Shown in pieces: positions 7,728-56,420 of a stretch of DNA of 64,000 bases. Location: positions 62,001 through 126,000 of the IMG/VR virus record IMGVR_UViG_3300034104_005687. One strand, 5' to 3'. Numbering within the stretch: the stretch's first letter is position 1; each line of letters begins with the position of its first letter. The notes under the pieces are model-generated. The model worked only from the letters and a program-made list of their open reading frames with translations. It did no database searches and was not told the origin of the DNA. Both the position numbers and the translations under genes were made by a program.

Positions 7728-8117
7728 GTGCTGTTGACCGTTGAGCATTCTAATTTGACTATGATACGTTTTGAAATCAATGGATCAGTGGTTGAGCACT
7801 ATCAACAACAACAAGAATATTGTGTTGATATAAACTGCAACGGCAATGTAGAAATATTCTTTGAACCATGGAAAATCAAACCATTGGTCAGAGTTGACAA
7901 TCATCTGTTGGATTACTGGTGCGCTGATATGCAATTGTACGATCACATGGTTAGACTTAAATGGGATTCAGGGTTCTATCATCGGTACCAAGAAAAAATT
8001 GTGCAGGGAAAAATAGATTACTTGAATCTAACAACACAAGAAGATATTGATTATTATTTGGGCATAAAAAATTCAAATCTAGATTTAGTTAGCCAACTCA
8101 AACAGTATTTAAAATGA
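7728..8117 (+). CDS. Hypothetical protein
   Basis: 129 aa; GTG start with AAGGA upstream; overlaps next gene (ATGA). Confidence 0.6.
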   Translation: MLLTVEHSNLTMIRFEINGSVVEHYQQQQEYCVDINCNGNVEIFFEPWKIKPLVRVDNHLLDYWCADMQLYDHMVRLKWDSGFYHRYQEKIVQGKIDYLNLTTQEDIDYYLGIKNSNLDLVSQLKQYLK

Positions 8118-9619
8118 GCCGAGTATTATTAGTTAACCTCCCCATGTACGACACATTGGCACCTCCCGGAGCATTGGCAGTTTTGGCAGCAATCTGCGAA
8201 CAAAATCAAAAGGCTTACGAGTTTTTAGACTTTAATATTTTTTTGCACCGCACACTCAACGAAAAAGAACTTGCTGAACTCAGTGATTGGTTGGTAGGTA
8301 TCACCATTGACTACCATGGTATCTCTGAAGAACTCAGACAAAAGGTGTTTGATCTATGGTGCGAGCAAATCAACAAAATAGATCCTGACAGTTTTGAATT
8401 CATTGGTATCAGTATTTTTAGTATGTGGAGTCTCAGGATGGCACAATTAATTTTGCCATGGCTGAGAAAAAGAACTTTATCCAAAATTGTATTGGGCGGC
8501 AACGGATGCAACAGTAAATTTTTTGATACAAAAATTGGCTTTTCTAGCTGGGTTGTTGAAAACCAATTGGCTGATTTTGTAGTGATCGGCGACGGTGAGC
8601 CCACGTTTGATGCCATACTCAAAGGCGAAACTTGTGTGCCCGGAGTTAATCAAGTACCTCAGAAAAACGACTGGGACATTGATCAATTCCCGATCCCCAA
8701 CTACAAAAACTTTGATCTGTCTTTGTATAGTGCAAAAAAAGTGTATGTTACCGGAAGTCGTGGATGTGTAAGAAACTGTACGTTTTGCGACATTGGTGCG
8801 ACTTGGCCTAAATTTCGATTCAGAAAAGCTGATAAGTTGGTAGAAGAAATCAAACAACATTACTATGATCTTGGGGTCACAGAATTTGATTTTACAGACA
8901 GTTTGATCAATGGTAGCATCAGTAACTTCTATCAATTCAACTGTTTGCTAGCTGAGGAAAAAGTCAAAAATCCTGATCTCAAAAATGTCAGCTACATTGG
9001 ACAATTTATTTGCAGACCCCAGTCTCAAATGTCTGCCTCACACTACGAAGCCATGTACTATGCAGGATGCAAGCAGGTTACCATTGGTATTGAAAGCTTT
9101 AGTGAAAATGTTCGATACCACATGCGTAAAAAATTTACCAATCTTGATATTGATTATCACATCGACCAATGCAGTAGATGGAATATCAAAAATGTTTGGT
9201 TGATGATTTGCGGGTACCCTACTGAGACATTGCAAGATCATGTTGAAAACTTAAACAGTTTAGAAAAATACTCCCTGTATGCCAAACAAGGAATAATCGA
9301 ACTAATTCGATGGGGAACTACCATGCACCTTATCGACGACACACCAATAACCAGTGCTGAGATGCTCAAGGATTTGGATATTGTATTGGATGCTCAAGGC
9401 AGCCTGGGATTTACCAGCACTTACAATTGGGTAAGTTCCAAGAATCCGTCTCTAGACCTTGCAGAGCGCATACGTCGGCGAGTTGAAATTCACGAACATT
9501 GTGTCAAGAATGGGTATCCTCAGCCAAGGGTCCGCCAAGAACTCAGCAGTTTGCTGACGCTGGCAAAGCAACACCTTGTGGGCCCAAGAAAAAAAATATT
9601 CGAGATTGGCCAGCTATGA
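8114..9619 (+). CDS. B12-binding-domain radical SAM enzyme
   Basis: N-terminal cobalamin-binding-like domain (GISIFS, IVLGG, VVIGDGE), SRGCVRNCTFC (CxxxCxxC), IGIES, GYPTET. Confidence 0.85.
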   Translation: MSRVLLVNLPMYDTLAPPGALAVLAAICEQNQKAYEFLDFNIFLHRTLNEKELAELSDWLVGITIDYHGISEELRQKVFDLWCEQINKIDPDSFEFIGISIFSMWSLRMAQLILPWLRKRTLSKIVLGGNGCNSKFFDTKIGFSSWVVENQLADFVVIGDGEPTFDAILKGETCVPGVNQVPQKNDWDIDQFPIPNYKNFDLSLYSAKKVYVTGSRGCVRNCTFCDIGATWPKFRFRKADKLVEEIKQHYYDLGVTEFDFTDSLINGSISNFYQFNCLLAEEKVKNPDLKNVSYIGQFICRPQSQMSASHYEAMYYAGCKQVTIGIESFSENVRYHMRKKFTNLDIDYHIDQCSRWNIKNVWLMICGYPTETLQDHVENLNSLEKYSLYAKQGIIELIRWGTTMHLIDDTPITSAEMLKDLDIVLDAQGSLGFTSTYNWVSSKNPSLDLAERIRRRVEIHEHCVKNGYPQPRVRQELSSLLTLAKQHLVGPRKKIFEIGQL

Positions 9620-10218
9620 AAATATTCTTAACCGGTGCATCAAGCGGCATTGGTGCTGCTTTGTTTGAAACTTTGTCAGTGGACCATCAAGTAATTGCAC
9701 CCAACCGTAACACATTTGATCTAACCAATACAAAACATATCGATGACTTAGATGTCGACTTTGACATGTTGATAAATTGTGCTGGTACCGGACTAGGCGG
9801 AAAACAACAGTTTGCAAATCATTGCAGCAACGATGTTGTTGAAATTTTCAATACCAATTTGCTTGCGCCAATTTTACTAACCAAAAACGTATTAAAAATC
9901 AATCCAGCATGTAAAATAGTCAACATTACCAGTACCAACAACAATCGGTATTGGCCAGGAGATTTAGTATACAGCCTGACCAAATCTTCATTGTCTATAT
10001 TTGGAGACATGCTTCGTGTCGAGTATCCTGATTGTTGTTTGCTAGAGATTAGATTGGGATTAACTAAAACCAATTTCAACAAAGCAAGATACAAGAACAC
10101 ACCTGATCGATATCAGGACATTTACAACAATCCGCATTTGCTTCCAGAAAATGTAGCAAACAAAATTGTCAGTGTGTTGTTTGACAATACAGTAAAATAC
10201 ATAGAAATTTCTCCTTGA
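9616..10218 (+). CDS. Short-chain dehydrogenase/reductase
   Basis: Start ATG 9616 (ATGA overlap): TGASSGIG, INCAG, catalytic YSLTK. Confidence 0.88.
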   Translation: MKIFLTGASSGIGAALFETLSVDHQVIAPNRNTFDLTNTKHIDDLDVDFDMLINCAGTGLGGKQQFANHCSNDVVEIFNTNLLAPILLTKNVLKINPACKIVNITSTNNNRYWPGDLVYSLTKSSLSIFGDMLRVEYPDCCLLEIRLGLTKTNFNKARYKNTPDRYQDIYNNPHLLPENVANKIVSVLFDNTVKYIEISP

Positions 10219-11312
10219 TGTATCCTTGGCAACTTTATCATTGGCATTTTGAAGTCAGTGGCAAATGCACACTGAAGTGTCCTCGGTGTCCTCGAAATGA
10301 TGCCAGCCCTGTACCGTGGTTAAACAAAGAACTGGATTTGAATTTTTTCAAAAAAATTCTAACTCCTGATCTACTTAAAAACACAGTCCAACGTATCACA
10401 ATGTGTGGTGACATTGGAGATCCAATCTATGCCAGTGAATACATCGAGATCGTAGACTACATCAAATCACATAATCCCAAAATACATGTGTATACCATCA
10501 CCAATGGCAGCTATAGAAAAGCTGATTGGTGGCAAGATTTTGCCAAAGTCAGTAACGAGTATGACACTATTAATTTTAGTATCGACGGGTACGATAATGA
10601 GTCAAACAATCTATACAGAGTTGGCAGCAACTGGGACAGTATCATGCAAGGCATGGATATCATGTGCCAACATAGTTCTGCATTTGTGTACTGGGCCACT
10701 ATTTTGTTTAAGTTCAATCAGGCCCACATTGATAGCATACGAGCCCAAGCACAAAACGCCGGGTGCGATGGATTACAACTTACGTACAGTACAAAATTTG
10801 GCAGCAAGTACGGAGAAGCATACGGTGGAGTCCATGACCCGCTTGAACCTGATCTAGAGTTTATAAGCAAAACTCATCGATATGAAAGATACTTTGAACA
10901 GCTCTCTGACAGACAACAGCTGAACCAATCTTATCTAGCTCATAATCAGCAACGTTTTATAGAAATCAAACAGCAGCATCAACAAATGATAACTCCCATG
11001 TGCAGCATTGGAAATCGAGGAATATACGTCAGTGCCGACGGAATACTGCATCCATGTAGTTGGGTCAGCTATCCATACCACAGTATCAGCACAGATCGAA
11101 AAACTATACATTTTAAAGATAGTTTTCATCAGATACATAGAAGCAAGTTGGATTTGAAATCTAGGTCACTGGATCAGGTCCTGAATGACCCAGTTTGGTC
11201 CAAACTGTTTGATACATTCGACAATCAAGGCAAAGCCTGGGTTGAATGTGAACAAAAATGCCATTGTAATTTAGTTGATCAGAACTATGCTGTAGGTTAT
11301 CTTACCAATTGA
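10218..11312 (+). CDS. Radical SAM enzyme with C-terminal SPASM/Twitch-like domain
   Basis: CTLKCPRC, GDIGDP, TNG, FSIDG; C-terminal C...ADGILHPC...CEQKC. Confidence 0.85.
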   Translation: MYPWQLYHWHFEVSGKCTLKCPRCPRNDASPVPWLNKELDLNFFKKILTPDLLKNTVQRITMCGDIGDPIYASEYIEIVDYIKSHNPKIHVYTITNGSYRKADWWQDFAKVSNEYDTINFSIDGYDNESNNLYRVGSNWDSIMQGMDIMCQHSSAFVYWATILFKFNQAHIDSIRAQAQNAGCDGLQLTYSTKFGSKYGEAYGGVHDPLEPDLEFISKTHRYERYFEQLSDRQQLNQSYLAHNQQRFIEIKQQHQQMITPMCSIGNRGIYVSADGILHPCSWVSYPYHSISTDRKTIHFKDSFHQIHRSKLDLKSRSLDQVLNDPVWSKLFDTFDNQGKAWVECEQKCHCNLVDQNYAVGYLTN

Positions 11313-11986: not shown

Positions 11987-12421
11987 ATGACATGGCTATA
12001 CAACAATCAACCGGTGGAAACTCTCCCAGAAGATTGTGTGGGCTTTGTGTACCTAATCACCAACATCAGAACCGATCGCAAATACATAGGCAAAAAACTA
12101 GCCAAGTTCTCAAAAACAACTCAACGAACAGTCAAACTCAAAAACGGCACCAAGAAGAAAAAAAAGATTCGCACCAAGGTGGACAGCGACTGGCAGGACT
12201 ATTACGGTAGCAGCCCAGAGCTCTCCCGGGATGTTGAATCTCAAGGCAAAGACAACTTCAAACGAGAAATACTTTATTACTGTAAATCTAAATCAGAATG
12301 CAGCTATATCGAAGCAAGAGAACAATTTTCACGACGAGTGCTAGAATCCCAAGACTGGTACAACGGACACATTCAGGTTCGTGTGCACGGCAGTCACATA
12401 ATCAACAAACTACACAGTTAA
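11987..12421 (+). CDS. Small GIY-YIG nuclease-family protein
   Basis: GFVYLITN...KYIGKK, YYGSS, conserved E (YIEARE) and N (WYN); Lys-rich insertion. Confidence 0.8.
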   Translation: MTWLYNNQPVETLPEDCVGFVYLITNIRTDRKYIGKKLAKFSKTTQRTVKLKNGTKKKKKIRTKVDSDWQDYYGSSPELSRDVESQGKDNFKREILYYCKSKSECSYIEAREQFSRRVLESQDWYNGHIQVRVHGSHIINKLHS

Positions 12422-12864
12422 GCAGTCAAGACTTGCACAGGTCAACCTCGTGTGCCGAACAGTAGAAACCTGGGCCCAGTGTCGCAGGGATCCGAAGCCT
12501 CGCCGCTGCCGCGAGCACTCAATCAGTATCCTTGACAGGACCACGATCGCTCAACACCTGCGATTTGATTGTTTGAACAGAATTTTAAAAGGGAAAAAGA
12601 CGTACTAGTGATAGTACACGTTTGTATGCATGTTAGCGTGTGTGATACAAATCGCCGTTGTGATAAAGACGCAGCTCGAGGTACCGGACAACCGCCTCTG
12701 CAATGCTGTAACGCTAAGTGACTTGCCCGACTCGGATGAAGTTTCTTTGCCCTGTGCGGGCAAAGTGTGACCATAAGATCTGGATGAAGCATTTAATCGC
12801 TTCGCTCTTTGATTCAACAACTGGTGTGAGCGACAGCGATACACCAAGAACTGCGTAGCAGTTC
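12422..12864 (+). ncRNA. Putative large structured non-coding RNA or origin-type element
   Basis: 443-nt gap with no credible ORF and about 10 hairpins, including GTACTA-GTGA-TAGTAC (GNRA loop on plus strand), CTTTGCCC/GGGCAAAG, GAACTGC/GCAGTTC, and a three-way junction closed by CAATCA/TGATTG. Confidence 0.6.
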
Positions 12865-13899
12865 TCAATAGTTGGCCACTGGATGTGTGTTGGGTTCTAG
12901 CAATTTGTGCAAGTCTTGTGTGTTGTTTGGAAACTTTGACAATTTCCAAGTTTTGAGATTTAGATTGTGTTGATATATCAAACAGTGCTGTATCACTACT
13001 TCTTGATCAAATGTTAGATCAATCTCGTAATACCAGTTGTTGACAATGCTGTCAACTATGTGCTGATAATTGTAACAGAAACTCAGCAAATTCAATTGTT
13101 TGGTTTGCCACTTTGCGTATATGGGTCTCCATGCTGCTAATCTTTCTGATACCATCTCTAAACTCAAATAGTTCAACATCTTTTGAACCGCTTGCTCGCC
13201 GCGGTACCACAACTCCTGGCAGTTGATCCACAAGTGAGGATATGTCATATTTTTTAAATATAACTCTTGATAGTAAAAAGGTCTTGAATCTAGTGCCTGT
13301 TGTTCTCGTTGGTCCCATATATCTGTTAGTCCTAAGTCTGTCCACGAGTCGATGCTGTCTTTAAAAAATAATTCTTGACGGTGCTGTTTTAATTCTCTGA
13401 CACTGTTGTATGGTTGATGATCAATTGTTTCTCCTTCTAATGCTCGCGGTTCTAAATGGTACAGTTGAATATTTGGATGATTTCCAATGTATATTAACTT
13501 TGCATTGCGAAGATTGCAAAATTCAAACACTTGATCAAAGTCTTGACTTATGTATTGAAAAATTTGTGATCTAACAGAAGGTATACCAATATCAGATATT
13601 GGTATATTTTTTTCATCTACTGCAACAACAAGTTTCAATGGGTATGGGTATGCGGAATACAGTTGGTGTTGCGGCATGGACAACAAGGACTCTATAAATT
13701 TTTGTGTGTTAACAAAGCCCATGGGATGATTTTTTTTATACCCATGGGCATTGAGTTCTTGCACAGGATCATTGGGCAATTCCAACCACTGTTGTTGATG
13801 TATATTGTAGTGATGTGTCTGCCCGGACAAGAAATGAATAGACCAATCAAAAAAAGTGCACCCTACTGGGTATGCACTAGTAATGCAATACACACTCAT
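12865..13899 (-). CDS. Hypothetical protein, possibly sulfotransferase-like fold
   Basis: 344 aa; N-terminal strand plus GCTFFDW resembles the sulfotransferase PAPS loop; weak. Confidence 0.5.
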   Translation of the reverse strand: MSVYCITSAYPVGCTFFDWSIHFLSGQTHHYNIHQQQWLELPNDPVQELNAHGYKKNHPMGFVNTQKFIESLLSMPQHQLYSAYPYPLKLVVAVDEKNIPISDIGIPSVRSQIFQYISQDFDQVFEFCNLRNAKLIYIGNHPNIQLYHLEPRALEGETIDHQPYNSVRELKQHRQELFFKDSIDSWTDLGLTDIWDQREQQALDSRPFYYQELYLKNMTYPHLWINCQELWYRGEQAVQKMLNYLSLEMVSERLAAWRPIYAKWQTKQLNLLSFCYNYQHIVDSIVNNWYYEIDLTFDQEVVIQHCLIYQHNLNLKTWKLSKFPNNTQDLHKLLEPNTHPVANY

Positions 13900-21493: not shown

Positions 21494-21501
21494 ATAACGT
21501 C

Positions 21502-21720
21502 ATGCTGCTACAAGAATTCTGGAAAAAAGCACCCGAAGCTTATCAAGACGTAAGTCAAGACAATGCACAAGTTACCAAAAACGACTTGCGCAAAACTCGC
21601 TTGACTTTGCGACAGCTCAACAAGCTACGAAAGATGAATGATGTGCGATCTTTTGAATACAAAGAGAAGCTCAAGAAAATTCGTCAACAGTACGCACCAC
21701 CACCACAACCTATTGCGTAA
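21502..21720 (+). CDS. Small head-module protein
   Basis: 72 aa basic protein between portal and core genes; TAAATA upstream. Confidence 0.7.
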   Translation: MLLQEFWKKAPEAYQDVSQDNAQVTKNDLRKTRLTLRQLNKLRKMNDVRSFEYKEKLKKIRQQYAPPPQPIA

Positions 21721-21824
21721 TTTTGATCATAATTGGCAATTTATGGCCTTTTTAGCCGATTAAACCGCGTATTTTTCTCTCGCATTGTAAATAACAATAC
21801 ACTTTACTTACAGGAGTTTTCTCT

Positions 21825-25828: not shown

Positions 25829-26977
25829 TTACACCTTGAACCACGATAGATATTGGCTAACTTTTTTAACAACGCTGGTCCAATCTCCGTAATCAGATTG
25901 TCTAAACAGTCGTGCTGTGGAGTACCAAGGGGAACTGTCGCGATCCAACAACCATCGCCAATCAGTACTGTAGCGTTGGATCATCAACCACAGCGGCCTG
26001 CCCAGTGCACCAGACAAGTGAGCCACAGCAGTGTCCACACTGACCACAACGTCCATGTGCATGATCAGTGCAGCAGTTTCTGCAAAGCTTGACACACAAC
26101 CAGGAAACATTTTGACACCCAACTGTTGAAGTTCAGCAGTTTCTTCTTCAGTGGCATCACACTGTAGATTGATCCATTCGTATTGCGGGTTGTCTTTCAA
26201 CATGCGAACAACATCATCAAACTGCATGGCTTTGTGTTGATTGAGCCATGAGTCTCGACGTCCGCTCCAGCACAGACCTACTCTCATGCGTGTTTTTGGA
26301 CCCAGACGTTCTTGCCACTGTTGAACCAGTGCAGGATCAGCATTGAGATAACTCACAGGTTTTGCCAGTATATCTAGTGTGATGCCCAACACACCGGGTA
26401 TGCTCATGATAGGAACCCAATAATCAAACTCGCCCATGTCGTCGGTATATCTACCTACTTGGTGTATGATATTGCTGCGACTCAGCAGCGGAATCAAACC
26501 GTCAGTGACTTGTAGTTTGACTTTTGCACCCATTTGATGCAAGTTCCACAAAAATCTCACAAACTGAATGTTGTCCCCGTGTCCTTGTTCGCCTACCACA
26601 AGAATGGTTTTGTCTCGTAGATCTTGACCGCGCCAACGTGGCTGCTGATACTTGGGTTCTGTGCCAGCAAGATGCTCGTAGTTCCATCTAGCTTCGTATG
26701 CTGGCCAACCGCGACTGTAGTCGCCTTGCAGCAGATAGGCCACTGCCAAATTGAATTGTGCAGTGACATTGTTGGGTTCCAACACCAATGCATGTTGCAA
26801 AAACGGTACAGATCTAGCAGGATAACCCATTTCTCTGGTTACATTGCCGTAGTTGTTCCAGGCCGCTGCCGATTCTGGATCTTGCACAAACGCCAATGCA
26901 TAGCATTTGAGTGCTTCGTGATATTGGCGATCGGTGCGATGTTGATTGCCTTGTTCAATTAAAAATTCTGTTTCCAT
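25829..26977 (-). CDS. TPR-repeat protein with GT-B (family 9-like) glycosyltransferase domain
   Basis: Start METEF at 26977; TPRs (AWNNYG, AQFNLA), EQGHGDNIQFVRF, VSVDTAVAHLSGALGRP, DWRW...SPWY. Confidence 0.85.
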   Translation of the reverse strand: METEFLIEQGNQHRTDRQYHEALKCYALAFVQDPESAAAWNNYGNVTREMGYPARSVPFLQHALVLEPNNVTAQFNLAVAYLLQGDYSRGWPAYEARWNYEHLAGTEPKYQQPRWRGQDLRDKTILVVGEQGHGDNIQFVRFLWNLHQMGAKVKLQVTDGLIPLLSRSNIIHQVGRYTDDMGEFDYWVPIMSIPGVLGITLDILAKPVSYLNADPALVQQWQERLGPKTRMRVGLCWSGRRDSWLNQHKAMQFDDVVRMLKDNPQYEWINLQCDATEEETAELQQLGVKMFPGCVSSFAETAALIMHMDVVVSVDTAVAHLSGALGRPLWLMIQRYSTDWRWLLDRDSSPWYSTARLFRQSDYGDWTSVVKKVSQYLSWFKV

Positions 26978-27033
26978 ACTGATATTTAATGCGTGCTGCC
27001 TGAGCTTTTGACATTTTCCATAAATATATCTGC

Positions 27034-27092
27034 AACGCAATCGTGCGTTTTATGCTGTTGTTAACACCCTCAGCGTAGCGGCTAGAACCCGC
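27034..27092 (+). promoter_or_regulatory. Structured 5' leader (three adjacent hairpins) downstream of a late promoter
   Basis: TAAATA at 27021-27026; AACGCA/TGCGTT, TATGCTG/CAGCGTA, GCGG/CCGC; AAGGAG RBS follows. Confidence 0.5.
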
Positions 27093-27118
27093 ATCGGACT
27101 TCTTTAAGGAGAAAACAA

Positions 27119-27823
27119 ATGGGTCGTCCTCTAAAAATTAAAAAATCTACTACCAGTGACATCGGTTTCAATCCGTTTAGCGCACTGACCAATCCAATTT
27201 ATCCCAGCGATCCTACCACATTTGATGGTACAGAGTATCTGGGTGTTGTGGGTGGTGCCAATGCTAGCGTAGCTACTGCTGCGTTTCCTGTGGTCAAATG
27301 CCGTGCATTTATTGTAGGCACAGCATCTGAAGCTGATGCATACATCATCACACAAAAAGGCACTACCAAGTATCAAGTGGCCACTGTCACAGCGGTCAAC
27401 GACGAAGACATGGTTGTAGGTCAAGCATATCGTATTTTGAGTGTGGGTACCACTGACTGGGCAGCATGCGGAGCCAGCGATTCAAATGCAGCAGTTGGTG
27501 ATGTATTCACTGCAACTGCAGCGGGTGCAGGCACAGGTACTGTGCAAAACGTAGGTACATGTGTGTTGGCCAACGAAGCTGACACAGCACTCACTGTAGG
27601 CAACATGAACATCACATTCAGCACAGGCGACAGTACTGCACAGTTGATCAGCAAGCTGACCAACAAGTTTGCTCTGGACTACAGCACACCCCCGGTTCGT
27701 TATTTGACCAACTTCTTCAGCGACGAAGGCTATGAAGTCAAGTCAGGTACTACAGGTGCTGCCAACGTAAGTGGACAACAAAACCGCGTGAGTTTGGCAA
27801 TTGTAGAGAACTTTACTTCGTAA
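27119..27823 (+). CDS. Putative virion structural protein
   Basis: 234 aa Thr/Ala/Gly-rich, late promoter and strong RBS. Confidence 0.6.
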   Translation: MGRPLKIKKSTTSDIGFNPFSALTNPIYPSDPTTFDGTEYLGVVGGANASVATAAFPVVKCRAFIVGTASEADAYIITQKGTTKYQVATVTAVNDEDMVVGQAYRILSVGTTDWAACGASDSNAAVGDVFTATAAGAGTGTVQNVGTCVLANEADTALTVGNMNITFSTGDSTAQLISKLTNKFALDYSTPPVRYLTNFFSDEGYEVKSGTTGAANVSGQQNRVSLAIVENFTS

Positions 27824-34896: not shown

Positions 34897-37800
34897 ATGC
34901 CATTGAACTTTCCACTTAACCCTGTACTGAACCAGTCCTACACATTTGCAGGCAAAACCTGGATATGGAATGGATCAGGTTGGGCACTAAAAACTCTTGG
35001 TGCTATCAACAACATACCAGTGGGCAATGTCACTCCCAGCACAGGTGGATTTACTGCATTAACAGCAACGTCTGTGTCAGCCACAGGCAACGTCACAGGT
35101 GGTAATGTAGTCACAGCTGGACAAGTCAGTGCAGGCGGAAATGTCACAGGTGGCAACGTAGTCACAGCTGGACAGGTCAGTGCAGGCGGAAATGTCACAG
35201 GTGGTAACGTAGTCACTGCTGGACGAGTCAGTGCCACCGGCAATGTGTCGGGTAATTTTATCTTGGGCAATGGTAGTTTGCTAACTGGCATAACAACCAC
35301 CTACGGCAATGCCAATGTGGCTGCATATTTGCCCACATATACAGGTAACTTAAATCCTGGCAATCTGGTAAGTTCAGGTGTGGTATCGGGTGCAAACTTG
35401 ATCACTACAGGACAAGTCAGTGCTGCTGGCAACGTCACTGGTCAATTCTTTATTGGTAATGGTAGTTTATTAACTGGAATTGCTACAAGTTATGGCAATG
35501 CCAATGTGGCTGCATATCTTCCTACATATACAGGCAACTTAAATCCAGGTAATTTAACCAGCAATGGTAATGTGTCAGGTGCAAACTTGATCACTGCAGG
35601 ACAAGTCAGTGCCACGGGCAATGTCACAGGTAATTTTATCTTGGGTAATGGTAGTTTGCTAACTGGCATAACAACCACCTACGGCAATGCCAACGTTGCT
35701 GCATACCTTCCTACATATACAGGCAACTTAAATCCTGGTAATTTAACCAGCAATGGCAATGTGTCAGGTGCAAACTTGATCACAGCAGGCCAGATTAGTG
35801 CTGCTGGCAACGTCACAGGCAACTACATTCTAGGCAATGGTGCCTTGTTAACCGGATTGCCTGCTACCTACGGCAATGCCAATGTGGCTGCATATTTGCC
35901 CACATATTCTGGCAATATTGGCGCAAACAACATAACCGCCACCGGATTGATCAGTACCACAGGCAATGTACAAGGCGCATTCATTCTTGGCGACGGCGGA
36001 TTTTTAACCAACGTCACAGTGAGCTCCAATGTTGCTGTAAGCCAAATCGCCAATGGTACCACAGTGTTGAGTGTAGCTGGGGCCAACGGTAATTTGGTCG
36101 CCACAGTAAATGGCGTCAGTAACGTGGCAGTGTTCACGCCCACAGGTGTTGAATTTGCCGGTAACTTGACGCCTGTAGCCAATGTCACTTACAACCTTGG
36201 TTCGCCAACTCGAGCATGGAACGACTTGTACCTAAGTGGTAACACCATTTATCTCAACGATTCCACTATCTCAGCCAACACAACAGCATTTACGCTGACC
36301 ACACCACTAGGCGGCACTGCTATTATTGAAGGTGGCGGCACTATTAAAGCGTACGGTAACTCCAACGTTGCTGAATATCTTCCAACTTACACTGGTAATC
36401 TAGCAAGTTTGCAAGGCAATGTTACGACCACGGCCAACATCAGTGGACAATATATTTTAGGCAATGGTGCATTTTTAACAGGCATTACAGCTGGAACCAG
36501 CTATGCCAATGCCAATGTTGCTGACTACTTGGCCAGTGGCACAGTAACATCAAATATCATTACATCTGGCAATATCTCAGGTGGCAACATAATTGGCAAC
36601 GGATCTGGATTAACATCAATAACTGGCGCCAATGTCACAGGTACAGTGGCCAACGCCACATTCGCTACATCAGCTGGATCAGCTACATCGGCTACCACTG
36701 CTGGAACAGTCACAACAAATGCACAACCCAACATAACATCAGTTGGTACATTGACTGCACTGAGTGTGGGCACTGGCAACATCACTGGTGGCAATTTGTT
36801 GTTGAGCGGTGCTATCATTGATTCAGCCCAGCTGGATCTACAAACTTCTGCTGCCAATGCCAACATTGTGTTGACACCCAATGGCACAGGCAATGTAAAT
36901 CTTGGTCGCATGAGTGCATCAGGCAACATTACTGCTTCAACATATTTTGGATCAGGTGCAGGCCTAACAAGTATTCCAGGTGCCAACATCACAGGTACAG
37001 TGGCCAACGCCACATTCGCTACATCAGCTGGATCAGCTACCACAGCAGGTACTGTGACCACAAATGCACAGCCCAATATCACAAGTGTTGGAACGTTGAC
37101 TGCACTCAGTGTCAGTGGCAACATTGTAAGTGGAGCTGGGGTAGGCGGAAATATCTCTGGTGCCAATGTTGTAACTGCCAACTTGTTTACTGGTACTTTG
37201 TCTACTGCGGCACAGCCCAACATAACATCTGTTGGTACTCTGACATCATTGAGCGTAACAGGTAATATCAATGGCGGCAATGTTAACTCAACATTCTTTG
37301 GCAACGGCGCTGGATTAACATCAATCACAGGTGCCAACGTCACAGGCACAGTGGCCAATGCCACATTTGCCACATCAGCTGGTACAGTAGCCGCAAATGC
37401 ACAGCCCAACATTACCAGTGTAGGCATACTGATCGACTTGAGTGCGTCGGGCAATGTCACTGCTGGTAACTTAACTGTTGGATCAGGCACTATAACCGGC
37501 GGCAATATCAATGGCGCAAATTTCAATGGTAATGTGGCATTTGGCGCTGGCACAATAGGAGGTTCTGGCAACATCAGCGGTGGTAACCTAAATGCCACAG
37601 GATTGATCAGTGCAACTGGCAACATCACCGGCAACAATATTTTTGGCAACATCCAGGGAACAACAGGAGATATACTCAATGTTACTAGTACAAACCTAAC
37701 AGTTACAAATATCTCTGCACCAAATCCTGGCAACGCTGTCAATATTGGTGCTGGCGGAAACAACAATCTCGTCGTAAGCAACGTGCTTGTACAGGTACAA

Positions 37801-40800
37801 AACGTTCCCTTGAGCGTGGCTGGCAACGTTACAGGTGGTAATGTATTAACTGGTGGATTGATCTCAGCCACAGGTAATATCACAGGCGGCAATCTAAGTG
37901 TCACAGGATTGATTGGTGCAACTGGCAATGTAGCTGGCGGTAATTTGATCACTGGTGGATTGATCACCGCAACAGGTGCTATTACTTCTACAGCAAACGT
38001 TGTTGCTAACAATGTCAACGTAACTCAGTCTGTGACTGGCACTGTGTTGTCAGCCACAGGCAACATCACTGGCGGCAATGTCAACACAGCTGGTTTGATA
38101 TCAGCCACTGGTGCAGTAAATTCAGGCAGCGTAAGCGCCACTGGCAACGTAGTTGGTGGGAACGTCAACACTGCTGGCTTGATATCTGCAGGTGGCAACG
38201 TCACAGGTGGCAACGTGTCTACAGGTGGATTGATTACTGCTACTGGCAACGTCACTGGTGGCAACGTCAACACTGCAGGGTTGGTATCAGCTACTGGCAA
38301 TGTTGCTGGTGGAAATATCACCACACAAGGTATTGTCAGTGCTTCTGGCAACATTGTGACTTCAGGATTCTTTGTAGGTAATTTTGCCGGCAATATCACA
38401 GCAAACATTGTGGTGCCCGGAGCCAACACACAGGTTTTGTTCAACACCAATGGCAACGCTGATGCAGTAGCTGGGTTGACTTACAACAAAGATTCAAATG
38501 TGCTGGCAGTGCTGGGTGTGCTGTCTGCACAAGGCAACGTTGTGGCCAACAATGCAGTGATCAGCGGCCTGACCACTGTTACTGGCAACGTCATAGGTGG
38601 CAACGTGGTCACTGCAGGACAAGTTAGTGCTACAGGCAACGTAACTGGCAATTACTTTATTGGTAATGGTAGTTTGCTAACAGGAATTGCTGGATCTTAT
38701 GGCAACACAGAAGTTGCTGCATACTTGCCAACTTATACTGGCAGCCTTCCTAACTTAACAGGAGTAGTGACCACTACTGCCAACGTCACTGGGGGCAACA
38801 TCATTGCCACAGTGGATGTGATTGCACAAACAGGCAGATTTGTTGGCAATGGTTCAGGATTGACCAATATTGTTGCTGCCAATGTCACAGGTACAGTGGC
38901 CAATGCTACTTCGGCTGTTACTGCTGGTACTGTGACCACAGCCGCACAACCCAATATCACAAGTGTTGGCACATTGACATCATTGAGTTCAAGTGGCAAC
39001 ATCACAGGTGCTAATATCAATGGCAATGGTTCTGGATTGACATCAATAACTGGGGCCAATGTCACAGGTACAGTGGCCAATGCTACTTTTGCTACTTCAG
39101 CTGGATCTGCTACTAGTGCAACCACAGCTGGTACAGTTACCACAGCCGCACAACCCAACATTACATCAGTTGGTACATTGACATCATTGAGTGCTACAGG
39201 CAACATCACTGGTGGTAACCTAAATGCCACAGGATTGAGTTTGAGCGGCAACGTTGTGAGTGCCATCAACACTGTTGCCAACATTACAACCACTGCCAAC
39301 ATTGCAGGTGGGTTCTTCATTGGTAATGGTAGTTTGTTAACTGGTCTAGCAGCAACATATGGCAACGCCAACGTTGTTGCTAATTTGGCTGCACTTGGTT
39401 CTAATCCAATATTGTCAACTGCCAACATCAGTGGCGCTAATATCAACGCCAGCGGAATTGTTAGTGCTACAGGCAACATCAACGGCGGAAACATCAATGT
39501 CACTGGTAATATTGTAGACACTGGTGCTCTAACAATTAGTACAGGTAGCGACGGCAATATTGCATTGGCACCAAACGGCACAGGTATAGTTACAGCTTCG
39601 GGTGCATTTAGTGCTGTTGGCAACATCACTGGTGGCAATTTGAATGCCACAGGATTGAGTTTGAGTGGCAACGTGATCAGTGCAATCAATACCACTGCCA
39701 ACATTACAACCACCGCCAACGTCACTGCTGGCAATATTTCAACCAGCGGATCACTGGGCAACATCACTGGTGCTAATGTTATTTCTTCAGTTACTTTAAG
39801 TGCCACTGGCAATGTGGTTGGTGGCAATGTCACTACAACTGGATTGATAACTGCTTCAGGTAATATTACATCAGCAGGCAATATCGCTGCCAACTTCTTT
39901 ATTGGTAATGGTAGTTTACTAACTGGTATATCAGCTGGCGGAACGCCAACTAGTATCGTCAACGGAACATCCAACGTTGCGGTTGCATTGAACGGCAACA
40001 CCACAATTGGTGTAGCAGGAACCACAGTTGGCACATTCCACTCAGGAGGCGCAATTGTTGTTGGCACTTTGGCAGCAGGAAATCTAACTGGTACATTAAC
40101 CACAGCCGCACAGCCCAATATCACAAGTGTTGGCACATTGACATCATTGAGCTCAAGTGGCAACATCACTGGTGCCAATATCAATGGCAATGGATCTGGA
40201 CTCAGCAGCATAACTGGCGCCAACGTCACAGGCACCGTGGCCAATGCCACTTCGGCTGTATCTGCAACTACAGCAGGTACTGTGACTACAGCGGCGCAGC
40301 CCAATATCACAAGTGTTGGCACATTGACAAGTTTGAGTTCAAGTGGCAACATCACTGGTGCAAACATCAATGGCAATGGTTCTGGATTAACATCAATCAC
40401 TGGCGCCAATGTCACAGGCACAGTGGCCGCAGCTACCACAGCAGGCACAGTGACCACAAATGCACAGCCCAACATTACATCAGTTGGCACATTGAGCATA
40501 CTCAATGTAACTGGCAACATTGTAAGTGGAGGTGGTACTGGTGGAAATATCTCTGGTGCCAACGTCATAACTGCCAACCTGTTTACTGGTACACTGACTA
40601 CTGCTGCACAGCCCAACATAACATCTGTTGGCACATTGAGCTCACTCAGTGTCAGTGGCAACGTAACAGGCGGCAATTTGAGTTTGAGTGGAAATGTGAT
40701 TGGACCTCTAAATTCAACAGCCAATGTCAACACCACTGGCAACATCACAGCAGCATATTATTTTGGTGATGGCAGTCAACTAACTGGTGTAACAGCATCT

Positions 40801-43800
40801 GGTGTAAATGCTGCTGCCTTAACTGGCAACACACTGAGTTCCAATGTGTTGTTCAGCAGTTTGACTAGCGTTGGTACTTTGACTGCACTCAGTGTCAGTG
40901 GCAACGTTGTTGGTGGCAACATCAACACTGCTGGACAAGTTACTGCAACTACATTAGAAACAACTGGCAACGCTGTGATCGGCGGAGACCTAGTGGTCAA
41001 CGGCAACACTATTTCAGTCAACATTGAAAGTCTCAATGTTCAGGATCCAATTATTGGGCTAGGAAGAGGTGCAAACAACGCTCCTCTCACAGTCAACGAC
41101 GGCAAAGATCGTGGCGAACAACTTTGGTACTACAGTACCGCAGAAAATTCTGCTTTTATTGGATATCAAAATGCTTCAGGTAATTTGATTGCAGCCAGCA
41201 ATGTCAGCATTGCCAACGAGATTGTAACAGTCAACAGCTACGGAACATTTGTGGTTGGTAATGTTGTTGCACAAACATTGAGCGCAAGTGGCAATATCAC
41301 TGGCGCCAACATCAATGGCAACGGATCTGGACTCAGCAGCATCACTGGAGCCAATGTCACGGGTACAGTGGGATCAGCAACAACAGCCACAACTGCTGGC
41401 ACAGTGACCACCGCAGCACAACCCAACATTACCTCAGTTGGCACATTAACATCATTGAGTGCGTCAGGCAACATTGATGGGGCTAATATCAACGGCAACG
41501 GATCTGGATTAACATCAATAACTGGCGCCAATGTCACAGGTACTGTGGCCAATGCTACTTTTGCTACTTCAGCTGGATCTGCTACTAGTGCAACCACAGC
41601 AGGTACTGTGACCACAAATGCACAGCCTAACATTACTAGTGTGGGCACATTGACATCATTGAGTTCAAGTGGAAATGTCACTGGCGGTAATATTATCACT
41701 GGCGGGGTAATCTCAGCAACTGGAAATATTACTGGTGCAAACATCAATGGCAACGGATCAGGTCTTAGCTCATTAACTGGTGCAAACGTCACAGGTACTG
41801 TGGCCAATGCTACTTTTGCTACTTCAGCTGGATCTGCTACTAGTGCAACCACAGCAGGTACTGTGACCACAGCAGCACAGCCCAATATCACAAGTGTTGG
41901 TACACTAACATCATTGAGTGCTTCAGGCAATATTGATGGTGCAAATATCAATGGCAATGGATCAGGCCTGACATCAATAACTGGTGCTAATGTCACAGGC
42001 ACTGTAGCCAACGCCACTTTTGCTACATCAGCAGGTAGTGCTACTAGTGCAACCACAGCTGGTACAGTTACCACAGCCGCACAACCCAACATTACATCAG
42101 TTGGTACATTGACATCATTGAGTGCGTCAGGCAACATCACTGGTGCAAACATCAACGGCAATGGATCAGGACTCAGCAGCATCACCGGTGCCAATGTCAC
42201 AGGTACTGTGGCCAATGCTACATTTGCTACTTCAGCAAACAATGCTACTACAGCAGGTACTATAACTGCTAACGCACAACCCAACATTACATCAGTTGGT
42301 ACGTTGATATCATTGAGCTCAAGTGGCAACATCACTGGTGCAAATATCACCACAGCTGGCATCATGACTGCAACTGGCAACATAGTGACCAACGACACAG
42401 TGATTACCAGCAACTTGCAATTGTCAGGATCTATAGTTGGCTCTTTAAACGTAACTGCCAACATTTCTGGTGCAAACGTCAACACCACCAACATAAGTTT
42501 GAGTGGCAACGTTATTACTCCGTTGAGAGTAAGTGGCAACATCACTGGCACCAACATTGAAAGTACCGCTGCAACCACAGTTGGCACTAACCTAACTGTC
42601 AGTGCTGGTAACATTGTGGTAAACACTGGTTTTGCCAGCGTAAATGGCAACGTCACTGGTGGCAACATCAACACTGCAGGACTAGTCAGTGCCACAGGCA
42701 ACATACGTGGTGGCAATATTGTGTCCGCAGGTTCTGTCAGCAGCGCAGGCACAGTTACTGCTGTTGGCAACGTTACTGGCGGAAACATTACTACTGCAGG
42801 CTTGGCCACTGTGACTGGCAATATACAAGGTGGCAATATTGTGTCCGCAGGTTCTGTCAGCAGCACAGGTGCTGTCACAGCTGGCGGCAACGTCACGGGC
42901 AGCAACATTACAACTGCTGGGCTAATCACTGCCACTGGCAACGTCACTGGCAGCAACATAAACACAGCAGGATTGATCAGTGCTGTAGGCAACGTAGTAG
43001 CAGGCAATTTTAGTACTGCAGGATTGATCACTGCGGCTGGTAATATCACAGGCGGCAATGTTATTGCTACCACATTCATTGGAAACTTACAGGGTAACAT
43101 TAGTCTGCCTGGCAGCAACACTCAAGTGTTGTTCAACAACAATGGCATTATAGGCAGTGACTCTGGTTTGGTATACGACAGTATAACCAATGCACTCAGC
43201 GTTGGCGGAACATTTGCCACCAACAATGGCGGCGACGTCAACGTATCAGGTCGTGTCAGCGTTGCAGGCAACATCATTACCAACACAGGCACAGTGAGTG
43301 GTGCTGCCGTTGAATCTGGCAGCACTGTGAGTGCAATTGGCAATGTGGTTGGTGGCAACATCAATACGGGTGGTAGAGTCAGTGCAACAGGCACAATAAC
43401 TGCTGTTGGCAACATCACAGGCGGCAACATTGCCACAGGTGGACTTGTAACTGCCACAGGCAATATCAACACTGGCGCAGGTATCAGTGCTGTTGGCAAC
43501 ATCACAGGCGGCAACGTCATTACCACAGGTGCTGTAATTGGACAACTTGATGTTGGCAATATTGCAGTCACAGGCAACATCAACGTACAAAGTGCTACTG
43601 CAAACACATTTGTCAGCGCAATTGGCAACGTCATAGGTGGCAATGTAAACTCTTTGGGCGTGCTCAGTGCAGTGGGCAACATCAATGGTGCCAATCTCAG
43701 CATAACAGGCCTTGGCAATATTGTGACACTGGAAATTGTGACACTGGCCAATGTCAAGAGTACTGAAATTTCAAACAGCACAACCAGCGGAGCATTCAAA

Positions 43801-56393: not shown

Positions 56394-56420
56394 TAGCACT
56401 TAACTACACAAGGAGCCACA

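What the first reader, a model, noticed from the sequence alone, without database searches (positions are those of the whole stretch)
12422..12810. Large, densely paired intergenic element with features of a structured ncRNA
Seen: longest non-coding gap in the window. Stems: GCAC/GTGC enclosing AGG-TCAA-CCT (12435-12455); CTCGC/GCGAG (12499-12515); CAATCA/TGATTG (12520-12571) closing a three-way junction with TCCT-TGAC-AGGA and GATCGC/GCGATT; GTACTA-GTGA-TAGTAC (12602-12617, GNRA loop); TTTGTAT/ATACAAA (12621-12651); nested GCAGC/GCTGT, GAGG/CCTC, CGG-ACAA-CCG (12671-12709); CTTTGCCC/GGGCAAAG (12745-12765); GAAGC/GCTTC (12786-12803); possible long-range TCCGA(12491)/TCGGA(12732); GGATGAAG twice. 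G-T pairs and the GNRA loop favour a plus-strand RNA. I could not match it to tRNA, tmRNA, RNase P or canonical group I cores, so it may be an undescribed class.
Basis: partly seen in the sequence, partly recalled or inferred. Interest (0 to 1): 0.85.

Follow-up and report, generated by a model that had tools for sequence, protein, structure and literature searches.

The report
Known phage RNA, longer than catalogued
The gap holds the gene for a roughly 445-base structured non-coding RNA of a T4-like jumbo phage from lake water; its front third is the already catalogued Polynucleobacter-1 RNA (Rfam RF01718), and its last 150 bases form a conserved, so far unannotated domain shared by a wider group of phage RNAs whose function is still unknown.

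Summary
The finding is real, but it is not an undescribed class. Window 12430-12574 (+) matches Rfam RF01718, Polynucleobacter-1 RNA (79.1 bits, gathering score 37, full model). The authors' own 2010 alignment already draws a structured 'tail' reaching about 12717. Homologues from more than 150 uncultivated phage contigs show one RNA gene, about 12422-12866, on the plus strand. My curated structure has 92 base pairs, 95% canonical in 41 distinct sequences, 59 of them with compensatory changes, including at least three pseudoknots. No ORF is conserved.

New here:
- The RNA belongs to T4-like jumbo phages and lies near the baseplate hub gene.
- A small GIY-YIG nuclease gene lies directly upstream in 110 of 118 loci.
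- The last 150 nt (12718-12866) are a conserved, unannotated domain, shared with two further subtypes that Rfam does not detect.
- This domain carries two 8-12-nt boxes that change together by identity in every lineage, with no complementary partner in the RNA.

Function is unknown. My best guess is a trans-acting scaffold that offers two identical sites to one partner. Verdict: a new member of a known family, with a substantial extension of that family.

The parts
12422..12866 (+). Whole RNA gene (about 445 nt): Polynucleobacter-1 domain, published 'tail' and unannotated 3' domain
   Evidence: Block conserved from the GIY-YIG stop codon to a terminal hairpin in 41 distinct type-A homologues. 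92 curated pairs are 95% canonical and 59 have compensatory changes. G.U far outnumbers A.C, which fixes the + strand. No conserved ORF.
12430..12574 (+). 5' domain, the Rfam RF01718 Polynucleobacter-1 model: P1 12435-39/12451-55, P2 12470-76/12480-87, P3 12497-12503/12511-16, and a three-way junction of P4 12520-24/12567-71, P5 12530-31/12538-39 and P6 12545-50/12560-65
   Evidence: cmscan gives 79.1 bits against a gathering score of 37, E = 4e-15, model positions 1-141 of 141. Covariation in P1, P3, P4 and P6.
12422..12443 (+). 5' extension with two candidate pseudoknots: GCAG 12422-25 with the P3 loop CUGC 12506-09, and GAC 12430-32 with the P1 loop GUC 12441-43
   Evidence: Pair 12431/12442 is G-C in 24 and A-U in 16 sequences, always canonical. 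Pair 12422/12509 is 100% canonical with 5 pair types. The inner pairs of the first pseudoknot are only 69-72% canonical, so it is only partly supported.
12575..12717 (+). Central part, the 'tail' of the 2010 alignment that is not in the Rfam model: P7 12602-06/12613-17, P8a 12621-27/12645-51, P8b 12628-31/12640-43, P11 12671-75/12705-09, P10 12678-81/12695-98, pseudoknot PK2 12633-39/12711-17, pseudoknot P9 12657-61/12688-92
   Evidence: The 2010 SS_cons and SS_cons_1 lines show P7, P8, P10, P11 and PK2. Covariation supports them. P9 is new: GUUGU/ACAAC, GUUGA/UCAAC, GUUGG/CCAAC, GUUGC/GCAAC, GUCAU/AUGAC and GUCGU/ACGAC all occur.
12680..12698 (+). Invariant core GGUACCGGACAACCGCCUC (P10 and the 3' strand of P9)
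   Evidence: Variants with up to 3 changes occur in more distant phages.
12718..12866 (+). Unannotated 3' domain: two GUGAC-plus-box modules around hairpin P12, then a small hairpin (P13), hairpin P14 with a GAGCG..AGCGA loop, and terminal hairpin P15
   Evidence: Conserved in types A, B and C. Not marked in the 2010 alignment and no Rfam hit at E up to 10.
12730..12741 (+). Box R1, ACUCGGAUGAAG, preceded by GUGAC at 12718-22
   Evidence: Its variable positions 12734, 12738 and 12740 equal those of R2 in 41 of 41 type-A sequences and nearly all of 52 type-B sequences.
12778..12789 (+). Box R2, AUCUGGAUGAAG, preceded by GUGAC at 12767-71
   Evidence: Same evidence as R1. No complementary partner column anywhere in the RNA.
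12745..12765 (+). Hairpin P12, CUUUGCCC-UGUGC-GGGCAAAG, between the two boxes
   Evidence: 38 distinct stem versions in 106 sequences as extracted by folding, for example UUCACCGU/ACGGUGAA and CUUAGCCC/GGGCUAAG.
12823..12845 (+). Hairpin P14, GGUGU/ACACC, with the conserved loop GAGCGACAGCGAU
   Evidence: All five pairs have compensatory changes. The loop motif GAGYG..ARCGAA is kept in types A, B and C.
12848..12864 (+). Terminal hairpin P15, GAACUGC-GUA-GCAGUUC; probable 3' end or terminator
   Evidence: 54 distinct stem versions in 106 sequences as extracted by folding. In many relatives it is followed by a short U-rich run; in the window the run is weak.
11987..12421 (+). Upstream neighbour: 144-aa GIY-YIG nuclease-domain protein whose stop codon abuts the RNA
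   Evidence: Pfam PF19835 SegE_GIY-YIG, E = 9e-34. A homologue lies upstream on the same strand in 110 of 118 distinct loci with enough sequence. This matches the 'GOS11034 / PSSM2_218-like' upstream gene of the 2010 paper.
12865..13899 (-). Downstream neighbour, convergent 344-aa ORF with no family; its stop overlaps the last bases of P15
   Evidence: This shows the RNA is not a 5' leader of a downstream gene.

Best explanation
The interval is most of the gene for a stand-alone structured RNA of about 445 nt (window 12422-12866, plus strand), encoded by a T4-like jumbo phage from lake water.

Shown:
- Its 5' third is the Rfam family Polynucleobacter-1 (RF01718).
- The middle part is the 'tail' drawn in that family's original alignment.
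- The last 150 nt are a further conserved domain.
- The RNA folds into at least 15 helices and at least three pseudoknots, maintained by compensatory change.
- It is a syntenic feature of a whole clade of such phages. It lies between a small GIY-YIG nuclease gene and the baseplate-hub block, and exists in at least three subtypes that share the 3' domain.

Inferred:
- It acts in trans as a stable RNA rather than as a leader or attenuator. The next genes are convergent, and it ends in its own hairpin.
- It is probably transcribed together with, or from within, the upstream gene.

Mechanism I commit to, with low certainty (about one in three): it is a scaffold or decoy RNA. Its 3' domain displays two equivalent modules, each a GUGAC-type box followed by an identical 8-12-nt box. 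These bind two copies of one partner, either a dimeric or doubly bound protein or two copies of one nucleic acid. That would explain why the two boxes must stay identical while drifting between phage lineages. On this reading the GIY-YIG gene is a conserved neighbour, possibly a homing-type nuclease that settled beside a highly conserved RNA gene, and not a requirement for the RNA.
For: Identity:
- RF01718 match of 79.1 bits over the full model.
- The same family scores 81-121 bits in 10 of 12 related phage loci.
- The 2010 alignment shows the tail helices and a pseudoknot.
- The context 'downstream of a GOS11034/PSSM2_218-like gene' is reproduced.

RNA nature:
- 92 pairs, 95.0% canonical; 59 pairs have compensatory change; 0 of 500 column shuffles reach this value (their mean is 79.9%).
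- 222 G.U cells against 16 A.C cells.
- ORFs are not conserved and segment lengths are spread evenly over the three residues modulo 3.
- The P9 pseudoknot is proven by six different complementary versions.

Phage origin and synteny:
- The window encodes a Gp23 capsid protein, a T4 portal, a prohead protease, gp15 and a baseplate hub, and is part of a 349-kb IMG/VR contig.
- The core is found 0.4-2.8 kb from the hub gene in phages whose hub is only 34-66% identical.
- Of 55 hub loci, 25 carry the A/B core and 17 the C core; most of the rest are truncated contigs.

Trans-acting rather than cis-acting:
- The neighbours are convergent.
- Eight lineages keep the RNA without the GIY-YIG gene, and 16 have another gene inserted between the two.
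- There is a terminal hairpin with 54 distinct stem versions as extracted by folding.

Twin identical boxes:
-.
- No internal or nearby complement.

Presence in RNA libraries:
- Metatranscriptome contigs of close relatives cover 12419-12585 and 12646-12809 and run through both boxes.
Against: - The function is not shown by anything here.
- The transcription evidence is weak. The runs are held as assembled contigs without strand, DNA carry-over is not excluded, and the downstream gene may be too divergent to recruit relatives.
- The 93% adjacency to the GIY-YIG gene across three RNA subtypes, and the fact that this protein is more conserved (50-91% identity) than the hub (33-53%), could mean a functional pair rather than mere neighbourhood.
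- No candidate partner for the boxes was found.
- The local fold around the boxes is unresolved.
- The whole-region folding energy is no better than shuffles.
- My structure was curated by eye on a MAFFT alignment and tested with my own script, not with R-scape.
Confidence: 0.55

Rival explanations
1. The RNA is the working partner of the upstream GIY-YIG protein. The 144-aa protein is a bare nuclease domain without a nucleic-acid-binding domain. The RNA, encoded directly behind it, would either target it (with the boxes as specificity elements), tether two copies of it, or hold it in check, as RNA antitoxins do for their toxins.
For: - The gene is on the same strand and abuts the RNA in 94 loci; a homologue lies upstream in 110 of 118 distinct loci.
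- The pairing persists across types A, B and C, although the central RNA domains differ beyond recognition.
- The protein matches only the GIY-YIG domain, residues 3-129 of 144.
- The protein is better conserved than the structural neighbour.
- Two identical boxes would suit two protein copies.
Against: - Eight distinct lineages keep the RNA, with intact twin boxes, and have no GIY-YIG gene within several kb upstream.
- Homologues of the protein occur in 494 isolated phage genomes. The RNA itself finds no match in the isolated-phage collection. Of the two homologue loci inspected, one has only a 148-nt gap behind the gene and the other none.
- An unrelated 266-aa ORF sits between gene and RNA in 16 loci.
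- 8-12 nt is short for a guide, and no matching target was found.
Confidence: 0.2
2. It is a cis-acting part of the neighbouring messages: a structured 3' untranslated region that stabilises or terminates the GIY-YIG transcript, or a buffer or terminator between convergent transcription units.
For: - It starts at the stop codon of the upstream ORF and ends at the stop of the convergent ORF.
- The terminal hairpin and a terminator-like site at 12785-12804.
- The 2010 paper rated the motif as possibly cis-regulatory.
Against: - About 445 nt with at least 15 covarying helices, several pseudoknots and invariant single-stranded stretches is far more than termination or stability needs.
- The RNA is kept where the upstream gene is absent or separated by another gene.
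- The distance to and identity of the downstream genes vary.
- The 12785-12804 hairpin is not supported by covariation.
Confidence: 0.1
3. It is a ribozyme or self-processing RNA, and the twin boxes are two equivalent reaction sites (cleavage, ligation or excision of the 48-nt segment between them).
For: - Its size, its multiple pseudoknots and its invariant junction nucleotides resemble large ribozymes.
- Two identical sites flank a conserved hairpin.
Against: - No match to any ribozyme or intron family of Rfam, even at E up to 10.
- RNA-library contigs of close relatives run uninterrupted through both boxes and the hairpin (run X17 record 17 and run X18 record 26).
- The spacing of the boxes varies between 42 and 82 nt.
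Confidence: 0.08
4. It is not an RNA gene but a DNA-level element (direct repeats as protein-binding or recombination sites), or it encodes small peptides. For example, it could hold a cysteine-rich precursor for the nearby radical-SAM enzymes, or a reading frame that hops between the two boxes.
For: - Direct repeats that stay identical are typical of DNA sites read by one protein.
- The window has 31-46-codon ORFs here, one of them cysteine-rich, and radical-SAM genes lie at 8114-11312.
- In the window, R1 and R2 are in the same frame, 48 nt apart.
Against: - Compensatory changes with many G.U pairs and few A.C pairs show selection on a plus-strand RNA.
- None of eight ORFs tested is kept in more than 3 of 41 homologues, and segment lengths are spread evenly over the three residues modulo 3.
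- Type-B sequences have in-frame stops just before the core.
- The box spacing varies and is not in one frame.
Confidence: 0.03

Closest known systems
Polynucleobacter-1 RNA motif (Rfam RF01718; Weinberg et al. 2010, Genome Biol 11:R31, PMC2864571)
   Same: Window 12430-12574 matches the full 141-position model at 79.1 bits. The helices, the freshwater origin and the upstream gene family are as described. The 'tail' helices and pseudoknot of the authors' own alignment are present up to about 12717.
   Different: - The catalogued model stops at about one third of the RNA.
- The paper found 16 examples and none in a purified phage. Here there are more than 150 loci on phage contigs of up to 349 kb.
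- The RNA continues for about 150 nt beyond the published motif.
- One published hairpin (CGG/CCG) is better explained as a pseudoknot.
- Two further subtypes share only the 3' domain and escape the Rfam model.
GOLLD and ROOL: large ornate RNAs often carried by phages and prophages
   Same: Several hundred nucleotides long, many covarying helices and pseudoknots, phage-borne, function unknown. GOLLD was also first seen in lake metagenomes (10.1101/2024.12.08.627333).
   Different: No sequence or structure match to their Rfam models. No tRNA genes nearby. Nothing here shows multimer formation. This RNA is smaller and has the twin-box domain.
Free-standing GIY-YIG homing endonucleases of T4 (Seg proteins), such as segB inside the tRNA gene cluster (my own knowledge, not tested here)
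   Same: A small GIY-YIG gene of the SegE type sits directly beside a highly conserved RNA gene in a T4-like phage.
   Different: The protein here has only the catalytic domain, at 144 aa. Its presence is near-universal and looks vertically inherited: I found no near-identical pairs of loci with and without it. That is not the patchy pattern expected of an actively homing gene.
Nuclease-associated guide RNAs (HEARO/IscB omega RNA, TnpB omega RNA)
   Same: A large structured RNA encoded immediately next to a small nuclease gene, with short lineage-specific sequence boxes.
   Different: The nuclease is GIY-YIG, not RuvC/HNH. There are no transposon ends. The boxes are internal, duplicated and only 8-12 nt long. 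No target match was found. The RNA also occurs without the gene.
Pairs of identical protein-binding RNA sites, such as nutL/nutR boxB of lambdoid phages (my own knowledge)
   Same: Two copies of a short site stay identical within a phage yet differ between phages, as expected if one co-evolving factor reads both.
   Different: Here both sites lie 42-82 nt apart inside one ornate RNA, and no reader protein is known.

Membership tests
Rfam RF01718 Polynucleobacter-1 RNA | Covariance-model score at or above the curated gathering score (37 bits) over the whole model | tested here: met
   79.1 bits, E = 4e-15, model positions 1-141 of 141, window 12430-12574 on the + strand.
Rfam RF01718 Polynucleobacter-1 RNA | Consensus helices: three hairpins followed by a three-way junction | tested here: met
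   All are aligned in the cmscan output, with one non-canonical pair. P1, P3, P4 and P6 covary in 41 homologues.
Rfam RF01718 Polynucleobacter-1 RNA | 'Tail' of the original alignment: two further hairpins, nested helices and a loop-to-downstream pseudoknot | tested here: met
   P7, P8a/b, P10, P11 and PK2 are present at 12602-12717 and covary. The small CGG/CCG hairpin of that alignment is not supported.
Rfam RF01718 Polynucleobacter-1 RNA | Lies downstream of a gene of family GOS11034 (PSSM2_218-like); fresh water or estuary samples | tested here: met
   A GIY-YIG ORF lies directly upstream and does so in 110 of 118 loci. Its homologues are mainly in T4-like cyanophages. The DNA is held by 14 lake-water metagenome runs. 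That GOS11034 is this same family is inferred, not checked.
GOLLD / ROOL / HEARO / OLE / raiA (large ornate bacterial and phage RNAs) | Match to the family's covariance model | tested here: not met
   No such match at gathering score in the window, nor at E up to 10 in 12200-13100.
tRNA / tmRNA | tRNA-like domain detectable by ARAGORN | tested here: not met
   ARAGORN found no gene in the 64-kb window.
Group I or group II intron with a homing-endonuclease ORF | Intron core model match, and exons on the same strand on both sides | tested here: not met
   No intron family at E up to 10. The downstream gene is convergent and ends at 12865.
Guide RNA of an RNA-guided nuclease | Obligate pairing with the nuclease gene, and a guide that matches a target | tested here: inconclusive
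   Adjacency is 93% but not obligate. No complement of the boxes was found in the window or within +/-10 kb of the loci. Binding and cleavage cannot be tested with these tools.
Kink-turn / K-loop modules (box C/D-like) | Tandem sheared G.A pairs from UGA and GAU strands, with invariant adenines | tested here: inconclusive
   UGA(C) and (R)GAU are conserved in both modules. However, the A of UGA is G in many sequences (GUGGC, AUGGC), which canonical K-turns do not tolerate. No structure test was possible.
Intrinsic terminator at the 3' end | GC-rich hairpin followed by a U tract | tested here: inconclusive
   P15 is a covarying 7-bp hairpin. The U run is short in the window (UCUCAAU) and better in many relatives (CUUUU). 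The only consensus-scan hit (12785-12804) is not supported by covariation.

The most novel reading that the evidence does not exclude
The small GIY-YIG protein and the RNA form one machine. A bare GIY-YIG nuclease domain would be targeted, dimerised or gated by a 450-nt RNA whose twin 8-12-nt boxes set the specificity. That would be an RNA-partnered nuclease of a kind not known so far, conserved as a two-gene module across a whole clade of T4-like jumbo phages.

The evidence allows this reading: 93% adjacency across three RNA subtypes, a protein without a binding domain, and boxes with no partner inside the RNA. It does not favour it: the RNA also occurs without the gene, the gene is widespread in phages that lack the RNA, and no target was found.
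Probability: 0.08. Interest if true: 0.9.

Novelty: new member of a known kind. Interest (0 to 1): 0.45.

Why it matters
Polynucleobacter-1 has sat in Rfam since 2010 as a 141-nt 'sRNA' of unknown function with 16 examples, none of them from a known phage.

This window and its relatives show three things:
- The entry is the front end of a roughly 445-nt, heavily pseudoknotted RNA.
- The RNA is a conserved, syntenic gene of a large clade of uncultivated T4-like jumbo phages in lakes.
- The part shared most widely is a 3' domain that nobody has annotated; it is also present in two subtypes that Rfam cannot see.

That gives RNA biologists a better-defined object for modelling, cryo-EM and pull-downs. 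It also poses a concrete puzzle: two boxes that must stay identical. Finally, it raises a testable question about the small GIY-YIG protein encoded beside the RNA. For genome annotation, the Rfam model should be lengthened and two sister models added.

Tried and rejected
- Folding energy as evidence: no better than shuffles on either strand.
- tRNA or tmRNA: none found.
- Other Rfam families in 12200-13100 at E up to 10: only noise.
- Isolated phage genomes: no DNA match to the RNA.
- Small ORFs, a cysteine-rich peptide for the radical-SAM neighbours, or translational hopping between the boxes: the ORFs are not conserved, and the box spacing is variable and not in one frame.
- A complementary partner for the boxes: none inside the RNA by mutual information, and none at a fixed place within +/-10 kb. 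The box is not enriched in the window.
- Pairing of R1 with R2 (UCRGAU with AUCURG): possible on paper and seen in some minimum-free-energy folds. It does not explain the identity at the other variable positions, and the best-pairing combination is never observed.
- Hairpins that would put each box in a loop: cognate flank duplexes are only slightly better than non-cognate ones.
- CsrA-type GGA sites: half of the lineages have AGA.
- Canonical K-turns: the key adenine is often G.
- A pseudoknot between UCGCUUCGCUC (12797-12807) and the P14 loop: the first strand is absent in several relatives that keep the loop.
- GIY-YIG as a patchy, recently mobile gene: the apparent absence in L089 turned out to be an 808-nt insertion between gene and RNA, and loci that truly lack the gene are not close relatives of loci that have it.
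- Bacterial genomes: 45 of 48 pattern hits were chance matches in GC-rich genomes. The three real ones are probably phage contigs binned into MAGs.
- The 2023 IMG/VR survey of structured RNAs (PMC10690425): its motifs are at most 151 nt long, and its supplements were not available to check for overlap.
Full report
**What is in the sequence.** Window 12422-12864 is a 443-nt gap between two convergent ORFs. The first is 11987-12421 (+, 144 aa) and the second is 12865-13899 (-, 344 aa). It is the longest stretch of the window without a stop-free frame of 150 aa or more. As a single sequence it does not fold better than chance. The minimum free energy is -108.7 kcal/mol against -110.6 +/- 5.0 for dinucleotide shuffles (z = +0.37), and z is -0.13 for the other strand. 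The case for a structured RNA therefore rests on comparison with relatives, not on energy.

**It is a known family.** A scan of the whole window against Rfam 15 gives two matches above gathering score. One is RF01718, Polynucleobacter-1 RNA, at 12430-12574 (+): 79.1 bits against a threshold of 37, E = 4e-15, covering all 141 model positions (alignment). The only paper in the library that names the motif is Weinberg et al. 2010 (PMC2864571). Its supplement says the motif came from fresh-water and marine samples and one Polynucleobacter genome. [quoted passage not shown]

The authors' Stockholm file marks an ACTUAL_MOTIF longer than the SEARCH_MOTIF that became the Rfam model. Its structure lines already contain a further hairpin, a long bipartite hairpin, two nested helices, a small CGG/CCG hairpin and a loop-to-downstream pseudoknot. 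In window coordinates this published 'tail' reaches about 12717.

**Full extent and structure.** The neighbour's protein led to a related contig (L003, 59% protein identity). There the non-coding DNA was strikingly conserved and a hairpin had four compensatory pair changes.

In 41 distinct 'type A' sequences the Rfam domain is always followed by the same conserved block, up to a terminal hairpin at window 12848-12864. I curated 18 helices in window coordinates; they are listed under parts. On that alignment, 92 pairs are 95.0% canonical and 59 have at least one double compensatory change. None of 500 column shuffles reaches this value (mean 79.9%, maximum 81.5%), and sliding the partner by one or two columns collapses the pairing. 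RNAalifold alone found 63 pairs, 30 of them with compensatory change. G.U cells outnumber A.C cells 222 to 16, so the transcript is the plus strand.

None of eight ORFs in the region is kept in more than 3 of 41 relatives, and segment lengths are spread evenly over the three residues modulo 3. The region is therefore non-coding.

- GAAGC/GCUUC is 57% canonical.
- UCCGA/UCGGA shows no compensatory change (one extra pair type, 76% canonical), and its UCCGA stretch is an insertion found in only a few sequences.
- The CGG-ACAA-CCG hairpin is replaced by a pseudoknot between GUUGU (12657-61) and ACAAC (12688-92).

Across relatives this last helix appears as GUUGU/ACAAC, GUUGA/UCAAC, GUUGG/CCAAC, GUUGC/GCAAC, GUCAU/AUGAC and GUCGU/ACGAC. 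Two more pseudoknots involve the 5' end: 12430-32 with 12441-43 is well supported, and 12422-25 with 12506-09 is partly supported.

**Who carries it.** The window is part of a 349-kb IMG/VR contig. It encodes a Gp23-type capsid protein, a T4-type portal, a prohead protease, gp15 and a baseplate hub. The hub is about 30% identical to those of jumbo myoviruses such as PA5oct, Atu_ph07 and Phosso. No isolated phage in the collection has the RNA. Fourteen lake-water metagenome runs hold the DNA. Of 48 pattern hits in bacterial and archaeal genomes, 45 are chance matches in GC-rich genomes. The three real ones are contigs of two MAGs, with a GC content of about 0.44 and lengths up to 183 kb, that look like binned phage DNA.

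Gene neighbourhoods are syntenic. A GIY-YIG ORF of about 142 aa lies upstream on the same strand. Small ORFs, a DUF6614 protein and the baseplate hub lie downstream on the other strand. Starting instead from the hub protein, the RNA core turns up 0.4-2.8 kb from the hub in phages whose hub is only 34-66% identical. In 10 of 12 such loci Rfam finds Polynucleobacter-1 at 81-121 bits.

**Three subtypes, one shared 3' domain.** 'Type B' loci keep the core and everything downstream of it. Their 5' domain is different and gives no Rfam match in 13 loci scanned.

In hub loci with neither core, the GIY-YIG homologue is still there and is followed by about 500 nt of non-coding DNA. This 'type C' has a different centre (GAUGUCGACGUAGGUUGGGAAAGGUCAGAGCCCA...). 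It keeps the same 3' architecture: a GUGAC-type box and box X, a hairpin, a second GUGAC/CUGAC-type box and the same X, a hairpin with a GAGYG..ARCGAA loop, and a terminal hairpin. Of 55 hub loci, 25 have the A/B core and 17 the C core. Most of the rest are truncated, and two more show twin boxes without either core. The unannotated 3' domain (window 12718-12866) is thus the most widely shared part of a superfamily in which Polynucleobacter-1 is the 5' domain of one branch.

**The twin boxes.** R1 (12730-12741, ACUCGGAUGAAG) and R2 (12778-12789, AUCUGGAUGAAG) each follow a GUGAC box by about ten bases. Their three variable positions agree in 41 of 41 type-A sequences (G/G 28 and A/A 13; G/G 29 and A/A 12; U/U 21, A/A 17 and G/G 3) and in nearly all of 52 type-B sequences. 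The next-best mutual information with any other column is 0.5 bit or less. Rarer versions also occur in matching pairs: AGACGAAG, AGAUCAAG, ACAUGAAG, AUGAAGAG, AGAUAAAG, ACAGAAA and GGUAAU.

The box is not enriched elsewhere in the window. Its complement is not found at a fixed place within +/-10 kb. The spacing of the two boxes varies from 42 to 82 nt. Two short sequences that must remain identical, without an internal complement, point to a common outside reader.

**Expression.** Six metatranscriptome runs hold 12-15% of the sampled words. When four of them were laid on the window at 80% likeness, short contigs of close relatives covered 12419-12585 (178 nt, 3 differences), 12646-12794 and 12653-12809, as well as the GIY-YIG ORF. 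Nothing covered 12818-13225. The contigs run through both boxes without a skip. This is compatible with a transcribed, unspliced RNA. It is weak evidence, because there is no strand information, DNA carry-over is possible, and the downstream gene is too divergent to recruit relatives.

**The GIY-YIG neighbour.** The ORF matches Pfam SegE_GIY-YIG (E = 9e-34) over residues 3-129 of 144, so it is a bare catalytic domain. A homologue lies upstream on the same strand in 110 of 118 distinct loci with enough sequence. It abuts the RNA in 94 of them. In 16 it is separated from the RNA by an insertion of 800-1150 nt that encodes an unrelated 266-aa ORF. Eight lineages have the RNA, with twin boxes, but no such gene, and they are not close relatives of loci that have it.

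The protein is 50-91% identical between phages whose hub is 33-53% identical. Homologues occur in 494 isolated phage records, mostly T4-like cyanophages. Two of these loci were inspected: one has only a 148-nt gap behind the gene and the other none. The data fit a conserved neighbour, perhaps a homing-type nuclease long settled beside a conserved RNA gene, or a shared transcription unit. They do not exclude a functional pair.

**How it most likely works.**
- Shown: it is a plus-strand, non-coding, heavily structured RNA gene of a phage clade, and a member of RF01718.
- Inferred: it acts in trans. The flanking genes converge on it, it has its own terminal hairpin, and it survives changes of both neighbours.
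- Committed guess, about one in three: it is a scaffold or decoy whose 3' domain offers two identical sites to one partner.

The rivals, in order of likelihood, are a working partner of the GIY-YIG protein, a cis-acting 3' element, a ribozyme, and a DNA-level or coding element. Each is set out with its evidence in the fields above.

**Novelty and score.** What remains new is an extension:
- the phage origin of the RNA
- its true length
- a corrected pseudoknot
- the 3' domain with twin boxes
- two sister subtypes that Rfam cannot detect
- the near-constant GIY-YIG neighbour

I therefore file the window's element as a new member of a known kind, of moderate interest.

Noticed in passing
window 27033-27121 (+): A second Rfam match: RF02980 freshwater-2 RNA (70 bits, gathering score 49.9). 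It ends at the start codon of ORF 27119-27823 (no Pfam family) and lies between that ORF and the divergent TPR/glycosyltransferase ORF 25829-27040, which is a 5'-leader position.
   Followed up: partly
loci L196-L199, L201, L203-L205, L208-L211, L216, L222, L225-L227 (downstream of their GIY-YIG homologue): A 'type C' RNA of about 500 nt. Its central core differs (GAUGUCGACGUAGGUUGGGAAAGGUCAGAGCCCA...), but it has the same twin-box 3' domain as the window's RNA. None of these loci was scanned against Rfam. L186 and L229 have twin boxes without any of the three cores.
   Followed up: partly
L089:5690-6487 (-) and 15 other loci: An insertion of about 800-1150 nt lies between the GIY-YIG gene and the RNA. 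In L089 it encodes a 266-aa ORF (start MGISLFTGCSYTAGTGF...) with no Pfam match above threshold. A similar ORF follows the GIY-YIG gene in L186.
   Followed up: partly
L143, L152 (MAG 'Haliscomenobacter sp. EUL_031', contigs of 148 and 183 kb) and L136 (Flavobacteriales MAG): Contigs of bacterial MAGs in the species-representative genome set carry the phage RNA (types B and A) at a GC content of about 0.44. They are probably jumbo-phage contigs binned into MAGs.
   Followed up: partly
window 8114-11312 (+): Two ORFs with radical-SAM domains (8114-9619 and 10215-11312) and a short-chain dehydrogenase ORF (9499-10218) lie just upstream of the GIY-YIG gene, inside a region otherwise rich in structural genes. 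A further radical-SAM hit came from an ORF elsewhere in the window that was not located.
   Followed up: no
window 21500-21794 and 56400-56699: The next-longest intergenic gaps (about 295-300 nt) have no Rfam match. They were not compared with relatives.
   Followed up: no
window 34897-44130, 44466-48836, 49230-53198 (+): Three very large ORFs in a row (3077, 1456 and 1322 aa). They were not analysed.
   Followed up: no
L095, just after the invariant core: One type-B relative carries an insertion of about 100 nt in the loop that follows the core, so this loop tolerates large additions.
   Followed up: no
hub loci L178-L232 compared with the window: The GIY-YIG protein is far better conserved between phages (50-91% identity) than the baseplate hub encoded 1-3 kb away (33-53%).
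   Followed up: partly
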